Positions 10,711-50,755 of a stretch of 64,000 bases of DNA are shown piece after piece (position 1 is the stretch's first letter; every line of letters begins with the position of its first letter). Location of the stretch: NCBI GenBank assembly GCA_053919585.1, contig CM132787.1; one strand, 5' to 3'. Both the position numbers and the translations under genes were made by a program. This DNA is from Euprymna scolopes (lineage: Eukaryota). The notes below the pieces were generated by a model. It saw nothing but the letters and a program-made list of their open reading frames with translations, did not search any database and was not told where the DNA came from.

Positions 10711-13074
10711 AATCTTTTTACCCCAATACGATATCCAACATTTTAAAAATATACCTTTTGCTGTACAAATCTAATGGATACACATCTAAAAAAGTTGGTG
10801 GGGACAGGATATTTTTATGGAAAAAATTGCCAAATCATCAATGAATCATCTCTAATAGAAAAAAAATCCAGGAAATAAACGAAGGTTATAAAAATGAAAA
10901 CGTGAGTCTTTGAATTTTAAACAAATGTGTGCACTATATATATCCAAATATATATACAGATGTATAAACAATTTATTTGAAACGCATAAAAATTTACAGT
11001 GAAAAATATTCAAGAATAAAATAGAATTTCTCCGTTCACTTATATAACGGCTGTTTTATTTAGGTTGTTCTTCTAGATTTAGTTTAAATATCGGTGTAAT
11101 TATTTTCTTAAAATATTTAACAGTTGCATTGAGAGCGAATATTGCAATTATTTTTTTCATGATTATTTCTTGCAGAAAATATGTATTTGTCACTTATTTT
11201 TTTTAATTTCTGGTAGATAAAAGCGTAGGTAGGTCCTAAAGATAACAAAACTATTTTCTATATTTTCTCAGTAAAAAAAGATTTAGAATTAAGTTCGTCA
11301 ACGTATTTGCGGAGAAACAAAATGGCCACGTCACTGTCTATTTTTGTAAAAGTATTCATAATTCATTACTATTTCTATTTAAGGAGACAAAGCATTTCAG
11401 CGTAAAGCAGGTTTTTATTATGTGCATATAATAATAAATGTAAAGGATATTATCTCTTCCATAAGGTTATGTTTCATTCATAACTGTAAGACACTTAGGT
11501 GCTATTTACAATTCTATACAATGGCAAGTTTCTTTCTCACCATAATTTTTCTGCACGAAAAAAATAGCTAGCGTTGAACGCACCACTGTCCAAATTCAGA
11601 TGTTTCCTCTCTAATTCGTGATATCTGTAACCAATTGAGTGATTATCACATTTTAAATATAAATCTGTTTTAATAATTGTATTAAAGATTGGAGATCAGA
11701 AATGATTAATTCCTGATACACGAAACATATATTAATATAAAACTTAATATGTATGTATACGTTAGCATTGTGCACGTATAGTATATATACATGCATATAT
11801 GTATATTTACGTGGAAGTATATATGAAATTATATATATATATATACATATACTTGTTCACTATCTTTCAGTTTCTAAAGAAATATATTGAATTTGCAAAG
11901 GAAATTTTTTTAAATATAACAGGAAATACAGTGCATTAAAAGTCCTTTATATAATCCATGAATTTCCGATATAAGATCTGCTGAATAATGAATTTAACAA
12001 AGTATTTCTTAAGTATATTTATAATTTTGCTTTTTAGCATGTCAATTTAAAGTAATTTACAGTTAAAATATTTTTAGGAAACATACAAAACAGCATCAAG
12101 AAATTTAGATTTATCAATAAAAAAGCTAAACACTTAAATTCTACATACTCATATGCAGTATTTTGCAAAATGCACATCTGTGAGGATATTATCCTTACAT
12201 CAAACACCAATGTATTAATAAAAGAACGTTGAATGCCTTGAATTCTATGTTCAATATTACTTTTTTATTTGTTGTACATACGTTTTTTAGATGAGAATTT
12301 ATAATTATTTTTTGTAATATTTCGACTATTATTCCCATCTCCGTTGTTTTTCTTTGTTTTACAACAATTTTACCGATGGTTCTTTCAAATATCTTCAAGT
12401 GAATCTACACTGGATATTATTGGTGAATAGCGAAAATTGTTACATTTTTTTCTTTTCCCAATAGGGCTAAGTTTTTTAGAAAAAATAGTTATAAATCCTT
12501 ATATTAAAATATACATTAATCATATCAAAAAAGTGGAATGAACCAGAGTTAATAACATAATTTTACAAAGACTTGGCGCTATTTGCGGTTTAACTTTTTG
12601 ACGTTGTGAAGGTTATATCAGCCGAAACGTTAGGAAAAAAATAAAAAAGAACAGAACCAAGAATATTAATCCATATAATACAAAAACTATTTTTAAATCC
12701 CAATCTGAAAAACATACATTCATCGTTTCAAAAAATTGAAAGGTACCCGGGGTTAAAAAGACAGTATAAAAAGACGTATCGCTATTTGCGTTTTAAATTT
12801 CTTACAGCTGTGTTCGTTTGACAAGCCAATAAACAAAACGATTTTCACTATTCACCAATAACATACAGTGTGAATGCATTTGAAGATGGTTGAAACTAAC
12901 ATCAACCGACACTTTGTAAAACAACCACAAAAACAACCAAAATGAGAATAATATTCCAAATAATAAAACATGTAATATTTTTTGTATTGCAAATTCCATA
13001 TATAAGTTTCCAAAAATTTAAATATAAAACCTTAAATTATACATAGATAAATGTACATATATAAATATACATAA

Positions 13075-26739: not shown

Positions 26740-28110
26740 CCAAAAGTAATATTTTGCTTGCTTTTTATTGAGTGTAAGAATTTATTAACGATCCGGAATG
26801 TTGGACAACATAAGAACCTTTCCCAAACCTATATTCCGCAGTGATCTTAATATAGTTCTTTATTTGGGTTTATCAAGATAATGTACCGTAGCGTTCGTAT
26901 TCTCCTCAAGCCTTCTTGTTCTGACGTTGTTTGGTGAATCTCCAAATCAAATGTTTCGTAAATAAATTCACCTTCTTTGGGCGTTTTCACACCCGATTCT
27001 CATTTTCTCGCAGGAGCATCAGTTCAGCTGGATATAATAAACATGTTATGTTAGAGTGTGGTGTGATCCCCAACATCTGAAAAAAAAGCTGGGGAGCTTT
27101 CAACGTTGACGTTGTTTTGCAATTCTCAGAGCATCGACTACGTGTTCTGTGTCCTGGTTTAATCTTGAATACTACGGTCGTAATGTGTTTTTCGGTAACA
27201 TTAAACCGATAATTGAATTTGACTTGATTTGTGATATCTCGTATCAGATAATTCTCCAGCAAACAGGGTAAAAAAATTATGCACTGATTTTATCGTCACC
27301 TCTTATGGGATCCTTCACATCGAAATCCTTTTCCTATTATTACACTGTAATCGACAATACCCACATGTATGCTATAGCAAGGATCGTCCGGGCTAATTTA
27401 ATCAAATATTTTTTTATCAGACAAAAAATATGCTTTTCTCACAAAACCATTTTTTGCGCAGGTTCACTATATTCTCATTGCCCTGTTCCGTTTAAGCCCA
27501 GTAAATATTACTAAGCACACTGCATTAAATATTATTTATACCAACACGAAAATATTTCAGGATTACTTTCTCTAGAACTTTTTGAATAGTACCTTTTTAG
27601 AGACATGACTACCTCGTCATATAAGGATAAACTGTTTGAAGTCAATGTATCGACATCTGAGTTTTATTTTTATTTTCTCTTAGTTTATTAAACTGATTAT
27701 TTAGAGATGTTGATTATTTATTATGGTGCATATCACATATGCTGTACACTCGCATTTTCCCCTATCAATTTGTTGAGAATAATCTAAGGGTTCCCTATAT
27801 TTCGGAACCTGTTTGAATTAGCAGTCCGCATCATTAATTTATTTCATGTGAAATTATTCCATTTTTAAATAATAGTTTAGTAATCGTGCCCCTATTTCTG
27901 TATTTCATCTGTGTATATACTGGTGTTGTTATTTGTTAATTGAATAGAGTGAATAACGTTTCCTGGTTCGTTTGTAATGGGGAATTTCTTAGGTTATGAC
28001 GACTTGAAGTGCCACGTTTGGAATCTGGGAGCATTTCATTCTTTACAGAAAACGGTATCCTTCATTCGTGCATTTATGAGCTTATTAGATCAATCCAGGA
28101 GTTCTTTTTG
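26740..28110 (-). mobile_element. Decayed Gypsy-type pol (integrase region)
   Basis: ORF 26987-27262 ends APQLFFQMLGITPHSNITCLLYPAELMLLR, resembling the integrase C-terminal motif AL..FL..YR.TPH......SPAELM.GR. The flanks are frameshifted and their boundaries are uncertain. Confidence 0.5.
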
Positions 28111-28987
28111 ATGTTTACTCGCCTTTCATTTTGACTAGTATCGCCAGAGACTATTATTTCGACATCTATATGTATAAATCTCCAACGTCTATTAGTGTGT
28201 ATGTATGTTTGTGTGCCCGCGTAAAACTTTTGACAAACCCAACCAACATTGATAAATTTGATATCATATTAAAGCGCTTACGTACGGACGTTTTTCTGCA
28301 GGAAGCGGGGGAGCAAGAATGACATTTTGCCTATGTATTTAAGTGGTAATAACGTAATAATCTAATGATGTTTATATATAATTGAACATATCACGTGATG
28401 CGACGTCACCTCGCTTTAATGACGACTTTTAATACATACATTAACCGCCTACGAAGGGTAACTTGATACTATGAACCAAAGTTAAATATTAGTTTTAATG
28501 TCGAAAATTGGTAGAAACGTAATTAGCGCATTTCAAAACGTAGAATACCAAATTTACAGGAAAATCGAAGGAGGGAAATTAAAATTATGAGTGATTGAAT
28601 TTTTTTACCGAAGAGGAACGAGTCGCTAATCTTAAAATGTAAACATTGCATTTCTTAATCCAAAATATGACACATAGGCAAGTAGGGAGGGAAAGGGGGA
28701 AGAATGATATGAGTTAATCAGCGTTTGTTTCACAACAGACTTATACTTACACATTTTCATTTTATACGAAATTTGAGTTAATGGGTTTAGTGAAATCCCA
28801 GAGATAACCTCCCCCTTATTTTCGAGTAGATCGAAACATCCTATATTTGTAGCATTTTTACTATTATGGAATACGGGCCGTGTTAAAATAAAATAAAAAT
28901 TAAATGAATTAAACAGTATATAAGTTATTCAGCGTTAATCAGTGTTATAATTACAGATTTTAATATTTTGTGAGTGTTTAATAGAAC

Positions 28988-29735
28988 TCCCAGGCATAAC
29001 CTTCCTTATCCAAGGCATACTCTCCCCTTTTTTTCGGGTAACGTTTGTTTCTCTAAAGCTTAACATCCCCGGCATAACCTCCTCCTTATTTTCAAGTGAT
29101 GTTTTGTTTTCCACTAAATCTTGACATCGCAGGCATCACCTCCTCATTATTTTCGAGTGATGTTTGTTTCTCTAAGGATTGACATTCCAGGCATACCTTC
29201 CTCCGTATTTGGAGTAACGTTTGTTTTCTAAAGCTTAACATCTTAGGCATATCATCCTCCTTATTTTCCAGTTTCGTTTGTTTCTCTAAAGGTTGACATA
29301 TCAATCTTAACTTTCTCCTCCTTATTCTCCAGTGACGTTTTTTTTTCTCTAACGCTTGACGTTTCAGGCATAACCTCCTCCTCATTTTCGCGTGACATTT
29401 GTTTTTCTAAAGCTTGGCATCCCATGCATAAGATCCTCCTTATTTTCGAGTGGCGTTAGTTTCGCTAAAGCTTGGCATGCTAGGCATAACCTCCTCCTTA
29501 TTTTCGAATAACGTTTGTTTCTCTAGGCTGGACAACCAAGGCATCAGTCCCTCCTGATTTTTGAATGACGTTTGTTTCTCTAAAGCTTGACATCCCAGGC
29601 ATAACCTTATCCTGTATTTCGATTGACGTGTGTTTCTCTAAACCTTGCCATCCTAGGCACAACCTCATCCTTACTTTTGAGTGACATTTTTGTCTCTAAA
29701 GCTTCACATCCCAGGCCTAACCTTCTCCATATGTT
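28988..29735. repeat. ~58-bp minisatellite, ~13 diverged units
   Basis: Consensus cccaggcataacctcctccttattttcgagtgacgtttgtttctctaaagcttgacat. ggcata-like anchors at ~29071, 29132, 29190, 29246, 29367, 29483, 29540, 29598, 29656, 29714. Confidence 0.95.
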
Positions 29736-30682
29736 CTAGCAGATACCCGTTGTCATTGGATGAAATAGGTAGAAATGTGTACTACCTGAATACCCAGTGT
29801 CAGCCATGATTGAATAAAATAGGTGTATATATATATAATAGCAGAATACCCGGGGTCACCCAATATGGGATGACATAGGTTGAGATATATATTAGCAGAA
29901 TACCCATCGTTGTCTGGAATTGGGTGAGATAGGTGAAATATGTACTAGCAGAATACCGGGTGGCACCCTGGATCGGATAGATAGGTGGAAATATGTACTA
30001 GCAGAATATGCCGCATCACTCAGCATTGGATTACATAGGTGGATATAAGTACTAGCGGAGTACCTGGCCTCGTCTGGAATTGAAGGAGATAGGTTGATAT
30101 ATGTATTAGCAAAATACCTGGCATGGCGCGGGATTAGATGAATAAGGTGGCATGTTTCCTAGGAGAATACCCGGCATTGCACAGGATTGGATAGGATAGG
30201 TAAAATATATCCTAGCAGAATACCTGGCGTCAACTGTCATCGGATAATATGGGTGGATATATTAACTAACAGAATACCCAGCATTCTCCGGGATTGTATT
30301 GGATAGGGGGATATATGTTCTAGCAGAATATCCGGTGTCACCCAGGATTGTATGAGATAGGTGTATATATGTACTAACCATATTCCTTGCGTTGCCTAGG
30401 ATTGGATGAAATAGGTGGATATATGTACTAGCAGAATACACGACGTTGCCCGGAATTGGATGACATAGGTGGATATTTATAATAGCGGAATACCTGGCGT
30501 AGCTGGGATTGGATGAGATAAGTTGAAATATATTCTAGCAGAATACCAGGCGCCGCCCGGGATTAGATAAAATAGTTTGATACTTGTATGAGCAGAATAC
30601 ATGACGTTGCTCGGGATTGGCTGAGATAGGTCAATACGTGTCCTAGCAGAATACCTGGTGTTGAATGATTGAATGAGGTAGG

Positions 30683-30765
<83 letters not shown>

Positions 30766-32230
30766 ACTAGCAGAGTACCCGATGTTACCCAGGATTGAAT
30801 GACACAGGTGGATATATCTACGAGCAGAATAACCGGCGTTTCCCGAGTTTAGATGAAATAGGTGGAAATATGTGATATCAGATACCCAGCGTAACCTAGG
30901 AATGGATGAAATAGGTGGATATATGTACTTGCTGAATACCCGGAGTCGCCCGGAATTGGATGAGATATGTGGAAATATGTACAAGCAGAATACTTGGTGT
31001 CGCCTGCGTTTGGATAGGATAGGTGGAAATATATATTAACAGATTACCTGGCATTGCCCGGTATTGAATTATATAGGCGGAAATATATAAAAACAGAATA
31101 CCCGACGTCATCCTGGATTGAATGAGATAGGTGGAATTATATACTAACGGAATAACTTGCGTTGCCCAGGATTGGATAAGACAGTTGTTAATACGTACTA
31201 GCAGAATACACAGAATCGCCCTTAANNNNNNNNNNNNNNNNNNNNNNNNNNNNNNNNNNNNNNNNNNNNNNNNNNNNNNNNNNNNNNNNNNNNNNNNNNN
31301 NNNNNNNNNNNNNNNNNNNNNNNNNNNNNNNNNNNNNNNNNNNNNNNNNNNNNNNNNNNNNNNNNNNNTGCTGGAAATATATAGTAGCTTTGTACCCACC
31401 GTCGCCCGGCATTGAAAGCGCTGCTTGATATATTTACTAGCAGAATGTATCAAAGTTATAATTTTAATAAAGTGGGTCGATAATGTGGGTTTAGTAATTT
31501 TAAATGATTGTCGAATTAGTAACATATTTAGAAAATTGATGAAATGCGAGTTATTTTATTAGTGTGTTTGTTTTGAAATATCCAGTCTAGACCATGTATC
31601 AAAGTTATTATTTTAGTAAGAGGGCGAGATAATGTAAGTTTAATCGTGAAAAATATTTGTCGAAATTAGTAAAATGTCCAAGAATTATGAAATAACATGA
31701 CAGGGGAATTATTTAATTGGTGCTGTTTCAATGAAAAAAAAAAACCCAGCCCAGACAATATTTCGATCATGCGCTTTAAATCATGAAAAACGATTGTCTA
31801 ACTTAGTAACATATCTAACATACTAGTAGAATAGCTGTCGTTTCCTTGGATTTGATGAGACTGATTGAAATATATACTAACAGAATACCTAGCATCGCCC
31901 AGGATGTAATGATATTGATTGGGATATGTACTAGCCGAATACCCGGCATTTCCTGGGATTAAATGAGGTAGTCTTGAATATATACTAGCAAAATTCCCAG
32001 CATCGCTTGGGATTGAATGAGATAGGTTGGAATATATAGCAGCAGTATACCAGGCATGAATGAGATACGTGAGATAATTTACAAGCAATATCGTTGGCGT
32101 CGCCCGGAACTGAAAGACATTGATAGAAATATATATTAGAAAAATTCCTGGCGTTGCTCCGGATTGAATGAGATAGTGGAAAATATATACTAGCAGAAAA
32201 ATCAGCGTCGCTCTTTATTAAATGAGTGTG
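29736..32230 (-). repeat. ~54-bp minisatellite, 30+ diverged units, each containing a Helitron-type 3' terminus
   Basis: Plus consensus tactagcagaatacccggcgttgcccgggattggatgagataggtggaaatatg; the reverse complement contains cccgggcaacgccggg-tattctg-CTAG|T. Interrupted by (TA)n at 30686-30762, a gap, and 31445-31815. Confidence 0.93.
31443..31692. repeat. ~150-bp-period diverged duplication inside the satellite
   Basis: atgtatcaaagttat.attttA..aag...gataatgt...ttgtcgaa(a)ttagtaa occurs twice, with a partial third copy near 31793. Confidence 0.8.
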
Positions 32231-32555
32231 GCAGAATATAAAATCTATACCGTAAATTGCTAAAACAATTTTCTATCTAAAAATTACTTCCTTTTTTAAG
32301 TCGATTCCGGATATGGCTTAAACAGTTTAAGATCTCAAAATAAGACTAATACTTATATATTGTTGGTTTTCTATTAAAGTTTACTATGCCAGTTTCTTTG
32401 AGGGTGTAATCTATACCGTTTGGATTTTTTAATGATATTATCCTGGAATAATGTGATAGTTGTAGAAAGAAACAAGATTATGGCAATTTTAAACGTGCTC
32501 TTGAGTTTTCTTTTGGGGGTTTGGTTGGAAAAAGTAATGCCAGTTTTGAGGCATA

Positions 32556-32750
32556 GTACCTATGTAAAATTGTTTCATATATGTATTTAAATTACCCGTA
32601 TTGGGGTAAGTAAAATTATTTCAAGTATATGTTGTATATTACCCGTACTTGCAAAGGTAAATTTATGTCATATACATGCTGTAAATTACCTACCCTTAGT
32701 TACATACAATTGTTTCATACATGTATTACATATCCTAGGTAGGTAAAATA
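32556..32750. repeat. ~47-bp degenerate minisatellite, ~4 units
   Basis: gtaaaatt.tttca..tatg...taaattacc(cgta) recurs. Confidence 0.7.
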
Positions 32751-33532
32751 TACTTTGGCTCGAAACAGCAAATGATACATAGACATAAAAAAAAAATCTT
32801 CTCTCCTAAGAATAACAAATATATTCAAAATCAAATTCAATTTTCTCATTGTTAATACAGTCCCGCGCAACGCCGGGTAGCCCGGTTAATATAGTATATA
32901 TCTATATACGTTATAATTTATAATGCATGAGAAATATATCCAATGTAATATGTTTTAGAGTAATATGTTATGACTACTGGAATTTTGGTTTTTATTCAAG
33001 CGTCTTAATTTTAAAGTATTTTCTGTGAAACTTGTTAAGATATCTATCACTTAATCGAGAAAAGAACGACCACGTGACTGACGACCATGTTTGCCAATAA
33101 ATTCTGCCGGGCTTTGTTCTATTTCAGTTCTATTTCTATCTAAACAACGCGAATCGAATTCGCCTCTTAAAGACACCGTATATTTTAATGGAATCCACGA
33201 AGAAAGATCGATGCTTACTACCGAAACATCTGATCGTCTTCATGGTAACCATGTTACACTCCGTTCGAAAAGCGTTCTGATTAGTAACGAAAAGGATCTT
33301 CCATTAAGATTCGGCAACGTTCCTTCGCAGATTTACATTAGCTTTACTTTTCATTCCAGACGAAATTAATCTTGTCGGATAAACTGAAAACTATAGCATA
33401 TTTCTTCAGATATTTCAAAGAAAGATTCAATGCAATAATAATGAGTGCAAAGTTCGGCGATATAAGATAATATGTTAATGCATACACTTTTTCAAGTTAT
33501 GTAAATAATTTGTATTACGCGTCATAAACAAA

Positions 33533-47217: not shown

Positions 47218-48535
47218 AATATATGCAGCCACATATAGCAAACGATGTATATGATATTAATAAACTCTAATGTATCATATTTCAATGCAAAACGATACAC
47301 GAAATTGAAGGTTCAGGGTCTTACAATTTACACAGAATAATCGCCACTAACAAATATTAAATCCGCATTCCATTGAAATTTGAAAATATGTCGAATTGTA
47401 GACGTAAAATACTATTATTTCGAATATATTACGATTCCATCTATGATGCATGTAATAAAATAACTTACGTTGATAAATCATGTAAAACTTAAAAATGAAT
47501 GAAGAAAACAATGATATTTTAAAATGTCCAAAGAAAGTATGTTAACAAATGGACTGGAAATAATATAGAGAGCCATAGCTAAAAGTGGAGACTGGAATAT
47601 AGACAAATCCCCACTGAAATAATGTTCAGACAGTGCGTGGTATACATTTTCTTTTATGTAAATAAGAATACGTGTACGTATAAATGATATAAAGCAATAC
47701 CCAGCTATTACTCTCAGAATAAATACAACCAACCCCAGTATGCGAAACTATAAATATAATCAAATAGTATATAACATTTATATTTGCATATCTTACTCTA
47801 ACTAGAGTATTATATATAAAATACATACTGCATTTGATGCCGATATGTAGCTTCTAGAAATAAAAGAAAATGAAAACGACTTTGCCAGGGAAATAGAACA
47901 AGAAAGGTCAAAGTAATCTAAAATATGTGCATCCACATATATCAAACGATGTATATGATATTAATAAACTTTAATGTATCACTGTTCAATGCAAAACGAT
48001 GCACGGAACTGAAGGCTCAAAATCTTACAATAAACACGGAATAATCGACACTAACAAATAGTTGATTAGCATTCCATTGAAATGTGAGAATGTGTGGAGT
48101 TGTAGACGTAAATAATATTATTTCGAACATAGTGCGATGGCATCTATGATGCATGTAATAAAATTCGACGTGATTTTTTTTTATTTGAGGTAAGTTAATT
48201 AACGCACCCTTCGGAGTAAAACAGTGATAATCATAATAACTAATATGCATTTGCTGTCACATTAATTTTATGTAGATGTACTAGCGATATTCGCAGTTAC
48301 CATGAATTCTGTTTATATATTTCATAAACATGATAGATAATTACATATAACTTTAATTACACCCAGGGTCATTATATCATGTGCTGTAATGTTTCGTAGC
48401 TGACTTTTTTTATGACAATATATTTGCTTCTTAATGATACTAGAAAGTCACCCGCTGTTGCCCGTTTATAAAATAGGCGTAAATATTATATTTTATCCAC
48501 ATAGCAAATAAATTATTTTCTAAAACCTACCTAGG

Positions 48536-48869: not shown

Positions 48870-50755
48870 TTACACATTCTAACTGGATGAATTTAATCAA
48901 AATATTTATGCGTATTTTCTGATCGGGAAACGCCGGCGGAGTGATAGTATAAGTATTACTATCGAATGCATATGAAATAGAATTTGCATTTTAGTGGATG
49001 ATTGTATTATCTTTAGTACGAGGAATGCGTAAGGTAAAACAATTCTGATCGCTTTAAATGCAGTTCCAGCTTCGATAGCAGGTGCACCTTACCAGAAGAC
49101 AGAATAATACACAAAATAATTATGAACGAAAAATATGAGAAAAGGCGTAGTTTTAATGCAAAACTATTTTACTAATTATGTACATGTGGTTTTGGTAAAA
49201 CGACTCTCGGCATTCGAAAAGGTTTTAATCTATCATAGTATTGGGAAAAGTAAATTAAATATATATATTTACGCAACACTTGCAAGTGGTTCATTATATA
49301 GTAAATAAGATACTATATGCAGTAACACGCATTGCATCTGAAAGAATCTCGAAAAGTTATGTTTAGAAATACAACAGCTGAATTATTCTCGTTTTTTTTC
49401 TGTTTAATAGTACTGCTTGTATCTTATTATATTATGAACCTACGCTCAATAATAATCACGTTTCTTATGATCAAAAGAAAAATAAAAACTAAACCGATTA
49501 TAGTAGGGTTTATTATTCCCAAATAAATTTGTCTACTACAATGGATTGATAGGACACTTAATAAAAATATGAACATCACGCGTATTCATATGATATTTCT
49601 ACACGCGTACTTGCAATACCATTCACGGAAAATTGTATCTCTCATGTATACACATTTTGTGAACGTGGAACCTAACAGTTTTCTCAAATTACGTGTGTTT
49701 TAACTAAAACAAACGCGGGAAAAGATAATCGACGATGGTAATGTTTTTGATATAAATTATTACATTGTCACCTAAAACAACTAAGATGCCACTCTGATGC
49801 AAGCGGCTACTATCAGGGGCAAAATCTACAGGGGTAGTATGTGGGGAGTTCGGCAGCAAGATTTAAGTGGATCTGTACATTAACTTAATCTATTTATAGA
49901 CTTAATCCTGATAAATGTATTTAATTCGGACTTAAAATATTTTTTTTCAATTTATGTGTGTTTTTGTTAATGCAGATATTAACTATGTAAGGTATTTCAA
50001 GTTTTCAATAGTCAGATGTAATAAACATTTTTTTTTTTAAATGTGCTTTTCCGTTAAGTTCGGTGTACAATTAGCATCTGTGTGCATGTATAATATGCCA
50101 TGGCAATACAACATCAATAATTTTCCGCTATTTACGGTATATTGTAAACTGTTTCCGCGGAACCCAATGCACTGCGTTACTACTCTTAATGGGCATAATT
50201 TTATATCATATAAACCCCAGCATACAATGTATCAAATGTTATATGTAATATAATTTCAAATATTCTCAGCAAGACTGATTGTATTTTAACACTTGATCCC
50301 GGAATATCTATCACAAATTAGTTATGCATAAATACGTTGATGGATCATGTAAAACTTTAAAATGAATGAGGAAAACGACGATATTTTAAAATGTCCAAAG
50401 CAAGTATGTTTGCAAATGCACTGGAAACAATATAGACAGACATATCTTGAAGTAGAGACTGACCTATTGACAAAAGTTCGACGCCTTGGAATATACTTGT
50501 ATTTATGTAAACAAAAATACACGTACGTATAAATGATATAAAACAATGGTCATATATTTCTCCCGGAATAAATACAGCCAGCCCCAGTATGCGTAACACG
50601 AAATATAATCAAATAATATATGCAATGTACGTTTTCATATCTTACTCTAACTAGAGTATGACATATATTTACATGCTGCATTTAATGCCGATATGTAGCT
50701 TCTAGAAATAAAATGAAACTAAAATGATATTGCCATGAAAATAGAACAGGAAATA
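47218..50755 (+). repeat. ~700-bp tandem duplication with the second copy split by a ~2.2-kb insertion
   Basis: 47218-47468 matches 47923-48170, and 47468-47905 matches 50333-50755. Confidence 0.9.
48600..48947 (+). mobile_element. Short Helitron-like element; an opposite-strand Helitron 3' end lies at 48440-48465
   Basis: Ends tcgggaaacgccggcggagtg-ATAG|T, similar to cccgggcaacgccggg..CTAG. At 48440 the minus strand reads acgggcaacagcgggtgacttt-CTAG|T. Confidence 0.45.

What the first reader, a model, noticed from the sequence alone, without database searches (positions are those of the whole stretch)
29736..32230. Satellite built from 30+ tandem Helitron 3' termini
Seen: each ~54-bp unit read on the minus strand is ...atccaat cccgggcaacgccggg tattctg CTAG t, a GC hairpin followed 7 nt later by CTAG|T. 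The same hairpin recurs as an apparent real end at 32862 (+), 48924 (+) and 48451 (-). Established: Helitrons end in a short hairpin plus CTRR and can seed satellites, usually from internal segments. Inference: here the termination signal itself is the amplified unit. That could reflect rolling-circle concatemerisation of a ~54-nt minimal circle or repeated end acquisition, and the array could act as a terminator bank or Rep-protein decoy.
Basis: partly seen in the sequence, partly recalled or inferred. Interest (0 to 1): 0.78.

Follow-up and report, generated by a model that had tools for sequence, protein, structure and literature searches.

The report
Helitron-borne array of backward terminator copies
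The 54-base tandem repeat is real and each unit does contain a copy of the end signal of this genome's rolling-circle transposons (Helitrons), but it is old, decaying cargo carried backwards inside one such transposon family, not a free satellite or a working bank of terminators.

Summary
The array is real. It has 35 readable ~54-bp units about 70% alike, between 29755 and 32216. It is interrupted by an (AT)39 run, the N gap and a ~150-bp repeat block.

Its consensus carries, on the minus strand, an 18/18 copy of CCCGGGCAACGCCGGGTA, followed 5 nt later by CTAG. That 18-mer occurs 15,149 times in this 5.9-Gb genome (earlier notes of this scan call it a mollusc). At 11,859 of those sites CTAGT follows within 4-9 nt, which marks real Helitron 3' ends.

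However, the array is not a free-standing satellite. It is an internal block of a non-autonomous canonical Helitron, window 28165-32889, from a family with thousands of copies. In that family the array always lies antisense to the host's own 3' end.

- Units at matching positions in different copies are 85% alike, against 70-72% for any two units, so the array was inherited already old.
- Hairpin and CTAG decay no more slowly than other positions of the same base type.
- Stem pairing equals the shuffle expectation.
- No array edge lies at CTAG (0 of 100 genome-wide sites, 0 of about 8 edges).

Nothing supports a terminator bank, a decoy or a 54-nt minicircle. This is a new variant of the known Helitron-borne tandem repeat. 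Earlier notes of this scan record other Helitron-borne arrays in this genome.

The parts
28165..32889 (+). One old copy of a non-autonomous canonical Helitron. It runs from the 5' end A|TCTATATG... to a 3' hairpin and a degenerate end (TTAA here; CTAG in the family consensus), followed by T.
   Evidence: Both flanks of the array are dispersed repeats (2515 and 640 first-look candidates). Homology of other copies stops at these two points.
28165..29007 (+). 5' non-repeated region including the 5' terminus. This copy is more diverged, or partly deleted, around 28290-28361.
   Evidence: Alignment with 10 copies. BLAST of other copies' 5' regions against the window. Terminus located.
29008..29736 (+). 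Array of 58-bp units, 12.5 copies. It is a separate internal tandem repeat of the family and is unrelated to the 54-bp unit.
   Evidence: TRF. Present in other copies. Similarity to the 54-bp unit is not above shuffles (P = 0.21 and 0.96).
29755..31225 (-). Main 54-bp array: 26 readable units, each holding a terminus-like motif (GC palindrome, 7 nt, CTAG) on the minus strand.
30686..30763 (.). (AT)39 microsatellite lying inside the array.
   Evidence: TRF. The Rfam mir-297 hit here is a low-complexity artefact.
31226..31368 (.). Assembly gap (N). The same unit family and strand lie on both sides. The two sides are out of phase at the nominal gap length.
31369..31464 (-). Two more 54-bp units; the one next to the gap is cut by it.
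31465..31792 (+). Block of a ~150-bp repeat, about 2.3 copies. It is a conserved component of the family, not a private insertion.
   Evidence: It matches the same position in at least 12 other loci at 75-84% identity, where it is also repeated.
31793..32216 (-). Distal sub-array of 8 variant 54-bp units in the same orientation.
   Evidence: The same variant block (R54b) lies next to the 3' region in other copies.
32231..32889 (+). 3' non-repeated region of the Helitron. It ends with the host's own terminus-like hairpin at 32862-32877 on the plus strand.
   Evidence: 40 scored genome matches at 82-85% identity, ending at query positions 629-697, most of them 653-678, i.e. window 32883-32908. 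Alignment of 15 ends.
48437..48495 (-). 3'-terminal remnant of another Helitron. It has a degenerate hairpin, then CTAG at 48440-48443, followed by T on the minus strand.
   Evidence: At least 25 dispersed matches end at query positions 102-104, i.e. window 48437-48439.

Best explanation
The 54-bp array is an internal minisatellite of a very abundant non-autonomous canonical Helitron family.

Origin (inferred). One half of its unit (27 nt: GC palindrome, 7-nt spacer, CTAG) is a copy of the 3' termination signal shared by this genome's Helitrons. It most likely came from the end of another Helitron that lay in inverted orientation inside an ancestor of the family. That piece, with about 27 nt of adjoining sequence, was then multiplied by ordinary tandem-repeat processes such as slippage or unequal exchange.

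Spread (shown). All sampled copies have the same layout: 5' region, 58-bp array (missing in one subfamily), 54-bp array, ~150-bp repeats, variant 54-bp units, 3' region. The array was already long and internally diverged in their common ancestor. It has since been copied passively whenever the host element transposed, and it decays neutrally by G/C-to-A/T changes, fastest at CpG.

Why it is tolerated (inferred from the known strand-specific Helitron mechanism). On the transferred strand the units read backwards, with CTAG before the hairpin. They therefore do not truncate the element, whereas sense-oriented copies would. The window copy is a dead relic whose own CTAG has mutated.
For: - Both flanks of the array are dispersed repeats with shared end points.
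- The 5' end starts TC after an A, and the 3' end is hairpin + CTAG + T in 13 of 15 copies.
- The array's orientation relative to the host flanks is the same in 8 of 8 informative loci and in the paired genome coordinates.
- Units are collinear between copies (Spearman rho 0.57-0.75, p <= 6e-4). Matching units are 85% identical, against 70-72% for any pair.
- The unit matches Helitron 3' ends with score 36-40, against shuffles at 14 +/- 2.7. It is 18/18 to the common hairpin and 17/18 to its own host's.
- The exact 18-mer has 15,149 dispersed sites with a control count of 0. Of these, 11,859 have CTAGT 4-9 nt downstream. The exact 27-mer of the array consensus has only 20 sites.
- Conservation tracks base type only. 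G/C positions score 0.79 inside the palindrome and 0.78 outside; A/T positions score 0.91. The lowest values are at the three CpGs. Stem pairing is 2523 cells against 2508 +/- 12 in shuffles, and 103 against 103.1 in the window.
- There are no RepHel-coding sequences in the window or in the array- and flank-bearing loci L001-L059, and no ORF over 209 aa in 27500-33500.
- Maize Helitrons with internal sense-oriented pseudo-termini have lost CTAG in 99% of cases (PMC3288121). Here 69% of antisense units keep it.
Against: - The source element of the unit was not found. The non-terminus half of the unit matches nothing I could test.
- No exact copy of the array-type terminus exists outside the array context.
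- The fixed antisense orientation comes from one ancestral event, so the 'tolerated because antisense' argument has no statistical replication here.
- The amplification mechanism is inferred, not shown.
- The autonomous partner using this terminus was not identified. Five RepHel loci on contig 1 have no exact-motif site nearby.
- One locus (C46:90674207-90675820) holds 7 perfect units and could be a young, actively homogenised array. I could not fetch it.
Confidence: 0.75

Rival explanations
1. The array is the integrated product of rolling-circle replication of a ~54-nt minimal Helitron circle (5' end plus 3' end), or of RepHel 'stuttering' at a terminus. In this reading the transposase itself made the tandem copies, once, in the family's ancestor.
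For: - Every unit contains one complete terminus-like motif.
- Head-to-tail Helitron junctions, with CTAG directly followed by a TCTATATA... 5' end, are common in this genome. The first 9 nt after CTAG in the unit (TACATATAT) look superficially like that start.
- Rolling-circle amplification of truncated Helitrons has been proposed for plants (Xiong et al. 2016, as summarised in PMC12628747).
Against: - The non-terminus half of the unit is no more like Helitron 5' ends than shuffled sequence (P = 0.71 and 0.44).
- It starts TA, not the TC that Helitron 5' ends carry (position 29 is A in 95% of 762 units).
- The array is antisense to its host, and it was inherited rather than regenerated.
- In the plant model it is 5' ends, not 3' ends, that multiply.
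Confidence: 0.08
2. The unit is an inverted duplicate of the host family's own 3' end (a foldback or subterminal inverted repeat) that was later amplified. It would not come from a different Helitron.
For: The unit and the host's 3' end share 17 of 18 positions of hairpin+TA, plus CTAG. There is a weak extra likeness of the other half of the unit to the host's subterminal region (P = 0.06).
Against: The unit is closer to the general terminus (18/18, spacer related by C-to-T changes) than to its host's (17/18, spacer GCCCCG against TTCTG). The P = 0.06 likeness lies in AT-rich sequence.
Confidence: 0.08
3. The array is kept because it works, either as a bank of spare terminators or as a decoy that binds RepHel.
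For: About 40 near-consensus termination motifs per element, in thousands of elements, would offer many binding sites. 69% of units keep CTAG.
Against: - No position-specific constraint: G/C positions decay equally inside and outside the palindrome, and there is no covariation.
- Only 17% of units keep a full 5-bp stem. In the window the hairpins are weak (-0.8 to -6 kcal/mol, not beyond shuffles).
- 0 of 100 listed genome sites, and 0 of about 8 independent array edges, end at CTAG next to foreign DNA.
- About 30% of units have G, not T, after CTAG.
Confidence: 0.04
4. The direction of descent is the reverse: a pre-existing 54-bp satellite supplied the 3' end that Helitrons now use.
For: Helitrons are known to acquire new 3' ends by read-through (Grabundzija et al. 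2016, cited in PMC12628747).
Against: - The motif sits at about 12,000 perfect dispersed ends of several families with different subterminal sequences.
- The array form is old and decayed, with only 20 perfect 27-mers.
- In all 8 sampled loci that also hold host flanks, the array lies inside the Helitron in the same orientation.
- Only the 27-nt terminus part is shared, never the rest of the unit.
Confidence: 0.03

Closest known systems
Non-autonomous Helitron/Helentron elements with central tandem repeats: DINE-1/HINE in insects and mites, Cg170-carrying elements in the Pacific oyster (PMC4067079, PMC7492417, PMC8268682; review PMC12628747)
   Same: Conserved element ends enclose one or more internal arrays of satellite-like repeats. 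The arrays are dispersed genome-wide by the element. Array length varies between copies (2-6 kb here), and several array types occur in one element.
   Different: The host here is a canonical Helitron (TC...CTAG, hairpin, T after the end), not a Helentron with subterminal inverted repeats and a TT target. The repeated unit contains a copy of the element class's own termination signal, in antisense orientation. I did not find that described in the papers I could search.
Maize Helitrons with multiple (pseudo) 3' termini (PMC3288121)
   Same: Extra copies of the 3' terminal hairpin motif lie inside a Helitron, and they are explained there by nested Helitrons.
   Different: In maize there are a few internal termini in the same orientation as the real end, and 99% have lost CTAG. 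Here there are about 40 tandem copies, all antisense, and 69% still have CTAG.
Palindrome minisatellites inside centromere-associated non-autonomous Helitrons of Meloidogyne (PMC13404089)
   Same: Short palindromes characteristic of Helitrons form tandem minisatellite-like loci inside non-autonomous elements.
   Different: Those tandem palindromes lie in the first (5') part of the elements, contain TC, and are read as 5'-end determinants. The elements are tied to centromeric clusters. Here the motif is the 3' terminator, and nothing links it to centromeres.
Rolling-circle amplified tandem arrays of truncated Helitrons in plants (Xiong, Dooner & Du 2016, as summarised in PMC12628747)
   Same: Tandem repetition of Helitron-derived sequence containing a terminus.
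   Different: The plant arrays repeat whole truncated elements, with many 5' ends and a single 3' end. Here a 54-bp piece with the 3' signal is repeated inside another element.

Membership tests
Canonical Helitron (non-autonomous) | 5' terminus begins with TC | tested here: met
   The window copy starts TCTATATG at 28165. Most of 10 other aligned copies start TCTATATATA(T)AAATC. The exact first base is blurred by TC/TA-rich flanks in some copies.
Canonical Helitron (non-autonomous) | 3' terminus CTRR (usually CTAG) | tested here: met
   13 of 15 aligned copies end in CTAG. The window copy itself reads TTAA at that place, so it is a mutated copy.
Canonical Helitron (non-autonomous) | GC-rich hairpin about 10 nt upstream of the 3' end | tested here: met
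   The consensus has a CCCG...CGGG palindrome 8 nt before CTAG. Folding of L044's end gives a 6-bp stem (-6.9 kcal/mol for the whole 51-nt fragment), and the window's own end gives -5.4 kcal/mol.
Canonical Helitron (non-autonomous) | Insertion between A and T without target-site duplication | tested here: inconclusive
   T follows CTAG in 13 of 15 copies and at 11,859 genome sites. A precedes TC in the window and in 2 other copies. No empty site was available, so absence of a duplication is not shown. Three junctions in L044, L051 and L059 fall at A|T of the family consensus, but their partner junctions were not found.
Canonical Helitron (non-autonomous) | No terminal inverted repeats (separates it from Helentron/HINE) | tested here: met
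   By inspection, the 5' start (TCTATATATATAAATC) and the reverse complement of the 3' end (CTAGCGGGGCTACCCGG) are unrelated.
Canonical Helitron (non-autonomous) | No RepHel gene of its own, with RepHel present elsewhere in the genome | tested here: met
   tblastn with a 1125-aa RepHel frame found nothing in the window or in loci L001-L059. The genome has 6421 and 11,406 first-look candidates for the Rep and PIF1 domains, with open frames up to 1603-1740 aa.
Canonical Helitron (non-autonomous) | Shares termini with an identified autonomous partner | tested here: inconclusive
   Five RepHel loci on contig 1 have no exact-motif site nearby.
Helentron-associated interspersed element (HINE/DINE-1 type) | Subterminal inverted repeats and a TT target | tested here: not met
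   The ends are TC...CTAG with an A|T-type context, and no subTIRs were seen. It works like a HINE with central repeats but is not one.
Classical satellite DNA | Long, homogenised stand-alone arrays | tested here: not met
   The internal repeat region (all arrays together) is 2-6 kb in the five copies measured, and all 8 loci that also hold host flanks show the same layout. Neighbouring units are only 71% alike, and orthologous units are more alike than paralogous ones.
Helitron with multiple pseudo-3' termini (maize type) | Internal termini in the same orientation as the real end, with CTAG lost | tested here: not met
   All units are antisense to the host end. 69% keep CTAG.

The most novel reading that the evidence does not exclude
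The tandem copies were made by the Helitron transposase itself. This could have happened by repeated cleavage and re-joining at a terminus, or by replication of a tiny circle. The product was then captured backwards in another Helitron. That would be a transposase-driven route from a termination signal to a satellite. It would also be a natural experiment showing that Helitron termination is strictly strand-specific.
Probability: 0.1. Interest if true: 0.65.

Novelty: new variant of a known kind. Interest (0 to 1): 0.38.

Why it matters
Helitrons that carry internal tandem repeats are well known, and so are Helitrons with a few disabled internal 3' ends. This case combines the two. About forty copies of the class's own termination signal are carried by a family with thousands of copies, always backwards.

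If the inference is right, it is natural evidence that the hairpin-plus-CTAG signal acts only on the transferred strand. It also gives a ready-made substrate for testing that with the genome's own RepHel, using sense against antisense arrays. It adds a documented case of a transposon end, rather than an internal segment, seeding a minisatellite.

For annotation it is a practical warning. Terminus-based Helitron finders will call dozens of false 3' ends in each such element.

Tried and rejected
- Minimal-circle idea: I compared the unit's non-terminus half with two Helitron 5' ends. It was no better than shuffles.
- Common origin of the 58-bp and 54-bp units: not supported (P = 0.21 and 0.96).
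- Selection on the hairpin: per-position conservation and pairing against shuffles, in the window and in 762 units, gave no signal.
- Use of units as real ends: eight array edges and 100 genome-wide unit sites all continue into the next unit or break elsewhere.
- A solo end with the array-type spacer outside array context: 0 exact matches. This test is strict, so it is only weak evidence.
- Nested-insertion proof from L044, L051 and L059: the partner junctions were not found, so I claim only that the junctions fall at A|T.
- Rfam and ORF scans of 27500-33500: only a low-complexity mir-297 hit below threshold and no meaningful ORFs.
- Organism: I did not establish it. The contig sizes suggest about 46 chromosome-sized pieces, and earlier notes of this scan call it a large mollusc.
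Full report
**What is in the window**

Tandem Repeats Finder reports a 54-bp period over 29755-30658, 30758-31209 and 31844-32051, at 68-71% matches. It also reports an adjacent 58-bp array at 29008-29736. Fitting the consensus unit along the minus strand resolves 35 units between 32216 and 29755. The 16-nt palindrome is found 9 times at up to 3 mismatches, against none in 100 shuffles.

The array is interrupted three times:
- by (AT)39 at 30686-30763;
- by the assembly gap at 31226-31368;
- by a non-54-bp stretch at 31465-31792.

Both sides of the gap hold the same unit on the same strand. The unit anchors at 31394 and 31209 are 185 nt apart, or 3.43 units, so at the nominal gap length the phases do not fit. 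The gap length is only an estimate, so continuity cannot be decided.

Among the 29 best units, 11 have exact CTAG, 7 have CTAGT and 5 keep all five stem pairs.

**The array is part of a transposon**

A four-unit query finds 2797 first-look candidates on many chromosome-sized contigs, at 76-86% identity. The 730 bases to the right of the array (2515 candidates) and the 611 bases to the left of the 58-bp array (640 candidates) are also dispersed repeats. They occur next to the arrays in the same order and orientation, for example on contigs 1, 4, 5 and 10.

Alignment of 15 copies shows that the right-hand homology ends at a hairpin followed by CTAG and then T. The consensus is CCCGAGCAACGCCGGGTAGCCCCG-CTAG|T. 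The window copy reads TTAA in place of CTAG. On the left, copies share sequence back to a start TCTATATATA(T)AAATC. In the window this start is at 28165, preceded by A.

No RepHel-coding sequence is in the window or in the array- and flank-bearing loci L001-L059. There is no ORF above 209 aa in 27500-33500.

The element at 28165-32889 is therefore an old copy of a non-autonomous canonical Helitron. Its layout is: 5' region, 58-bp array, 54-bp array, ~150-bp repeats, variant 54-bp units, 3' region. The stretch at 31465-31792 is a conserved repeat block of the family, found at the same place in at least 12 other loci. A subfamily lacks the 58-bp array and has a different junction.

**Is the unit a Helitron terminus?**

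Yes, in sequence. In the loci fetched, at least two Helitron families with different subterminal sequence end in CCCGGGCAACGCCGGGTA, then 6-8 mostly C-rich bases, then CTAG and T.

Genome-wide counts:

| Pattern | Sites | Control |
|---|---|---|
| Exact 18-mer | 15,149, dispersed | 0 |
| 18-mer with CTAGT 4-9 nt downstream | 11,859 | 0 |
| Exact 27-mer of the array consensus | 20 (7 in one array on contig 46) | 0 |

The unit consensus is the same in the window and in 762 units from 29 other loci. It matches the 18-mer 18/18 and has CTAG 5 nt later. The local alignment score against the two families' ends is 36 and 40, against 14 +/- 2.7 for dinucleotide shuffles. The unit is one step closer to the general terminus than to its own host's (17/18).

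Perfect dispersed ends outnumber perfect array units by about 600 to 1, and only the terminus part is shared. Descent from terminus to array is therefore far more likely than the reverse.

**What the other half of the unit is**

It is unknown. It is no more like Helitron 5' ends than shuffled sequence (P = 0.71 and 0.44). It begins TA, not TC. Likeness to subterminal sequence is at best marginal (P = 0.06 and 0.47). The 58-bp unit is unrelated. The '54-nt minimal circle' idea therefore has no sequence support.

**Orientation and inheritance**

All window units carry the motif on the minus strand, while the host's own terminus is on the plus strand. The same relative orientation holds in 8 of 8 loci where array and flanks are both seen. 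It also holds in the coordinate pairs.

Units are collinear between the window and three other copies (Spearman rho 0.57-0.75, p <= 6e-4). Best-matching units are 85% identical, whereas arbitrary units, within or between copies, are 70-72% identical. The array was thus already long and diverged in the common ancestor, and it has been copied as cargo. It is not rebuilt at each transposition. The repeated appearance of one identical 35-mer unit variant at many dispersed loci fits this.

**Is it constrained or used?**

No sign of either.
- In 762 units, conservation follows base type. G/C-consensus positions score 0.79 inside the palindrome and 0.78 outside; A/T positions score 0.91. The three CpG steps are the most decayed.
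- Stem pairing equals the shuffle expectation: 2523 against 2508 +/- 12, and 103 against 103.1 in the window.
- Only 17% of units keep a full stem. Window units fold weakly.
- If units served as terminators for the minus strand, some arrays should stop at CTAG next to unrelated DNA. Among about eight independent array edges none does. Among the first 100 of 879 genome sites matching a degenerate unit pattern, all continue into the next unit, as one of two unit subtypes.
- About 30% of units have G rather than T after CTAG.

**Mechanism proposed**

Shown:
- the unit contains the termination motif;
- the array is internal, antisense, inherited and decaying.

Inferred:
- A Helitron end lying backwards inside an ancestor of the family was amplified by ordinary tandem-repeat processes.
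- The result could persist because Helitron termination acts on the transferred strand. On that strand these units read CTAG-then-hairpin and so do not truncate the element.

The maize case gives indirect support. There, internal termini in sense orientation have lost CTAG in 99 of 100 sampled elements (PMC3288121). Here 69% of antisense units keep it. This argument rests on one ancestral event and on the published Helitron model (hairpin as termination site; PMC12628747). It is not an experiment.

**Comparison with what is known**

- Central tandem repeats in non-autonomous Helitrons and Helentrons are well documented (PMC4067079, PMC7492417, PMC12628747).
- Tandem palindromes inside Meloidogyne Helitrons are reported near the 5' part (PMC13404089).
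- Rolling-circle arrays in plants multiply 5' ends.
- In four full-text searches I found no description of a minisatellite whose unit is the 3' terminator in antisense orientation. That search is limited to the open library.

I therefore class this as a new variant of a known kind, of moderate interest.

**Other points of the finding**

- The end at 48451(-) is supported: dispersed matches stop within 3 nt of its CTAG.
- The end at 48924(+) is not supported: matches stop at a (CA)n run about 50 nt upstream.

**Limits**

I could not read autonomous elements' ends or the young array on contig 46.
- Five RepHel loci on contig 1 have no exact-motif site nearby, so the partner transposase is not identified.
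- Earlier notes of this scan describe other Helitron-borne arrays in the same genome and call it a large mollusc. I used them only as context.

Noticed in passing
L035:2713-2760, L035:3313-3360, L048:191-240, L052:210-260, L052:1182-1230, L059:5491-5540, L059:7471-7520: Head-to-tail strings of Helitrons. A 3' end ...CTAG is followed directly by another element's 5' start TCTATA(T/A)ATATAAAAGCG, with no base between. L059 holds four termini within 2.6 kb. This could be insertion exactly at a resident 5' junction, or integrated multimers.
   Followed up: partly
G000:C46:90674207-90675820: Seven exact copies of the 27-nt array consensus lie within 1.6 kb, mostly at 54-bp multiples. This is much more homogeneous than any array I could read, so it may be a young or recently homogenised copy. 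It could not be fetched.
   Followed up: no
window 29008-29736: A separate 58-bp tandem array (12.5 copies, 74% matches) directly abuts the 54-bp array. It belongs to the same Helitron family but is absent from one subfamily. Its origin is unknown.
   Followed up: partly
window 31465-31792 and the same block in L002, L004, L005, L012, L013, L018, L028, L056, L057: A ~150-bp repeat (2-5 copies per element) sits between the main and distal 54-bp sub-arrays in most copies. It is a third internal tandem repeat of the family.
   Followed up: partly
L004:270-384, L009:1240-1355, L020:160-276, L024:165-278, L030:2858-2970: A subfamily in which the 54-bp array is followed (minus-strand reading) by CTAGTACATATT-ACTTTAACATGAATT... 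instead of the 58-bp array. In both subfamilies the array stops about 7 nt after a CTAG.
   Followed up: no
unit positions 3-4, 10-11, 13-14 (762 units from L002-L030); window as a whole: The three CpG steps of the unit are its most decayed positions (0.60-0.76, mostly C-to-T and G-to-A). Yet the window as a whole has CpG observed/expected of 0.99 at 31% G+C. This may reflect repeat-targeted methylation and is unexplained.
   Followed up: no
G000, e.g. C1:76244699-76245241, C4:35966136-35966774, C5:86346236-86346874: Very many RepHel-coding loci (6421 Rep and 11,406 PIF1 first-look candidates). Dozens have uninterrupted frames of 1486-1740 aa, so Helitrons look recently active in this genome.
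   Followed up: partly
L033, L040, L042 (3' flanks); L049, L054, L057 (5' flanks): Several copies of the family sit in (TA)n microsatellites, as expected for an A|T target. This also blurs the exact 5' boundary.
   Followed up: no
window 30683-30753: The Rfam mir-297 match (28 bits against a gathering score of 90) falls on the (AT)39 run and is a low-complexity artefact.
   Followed up: yes
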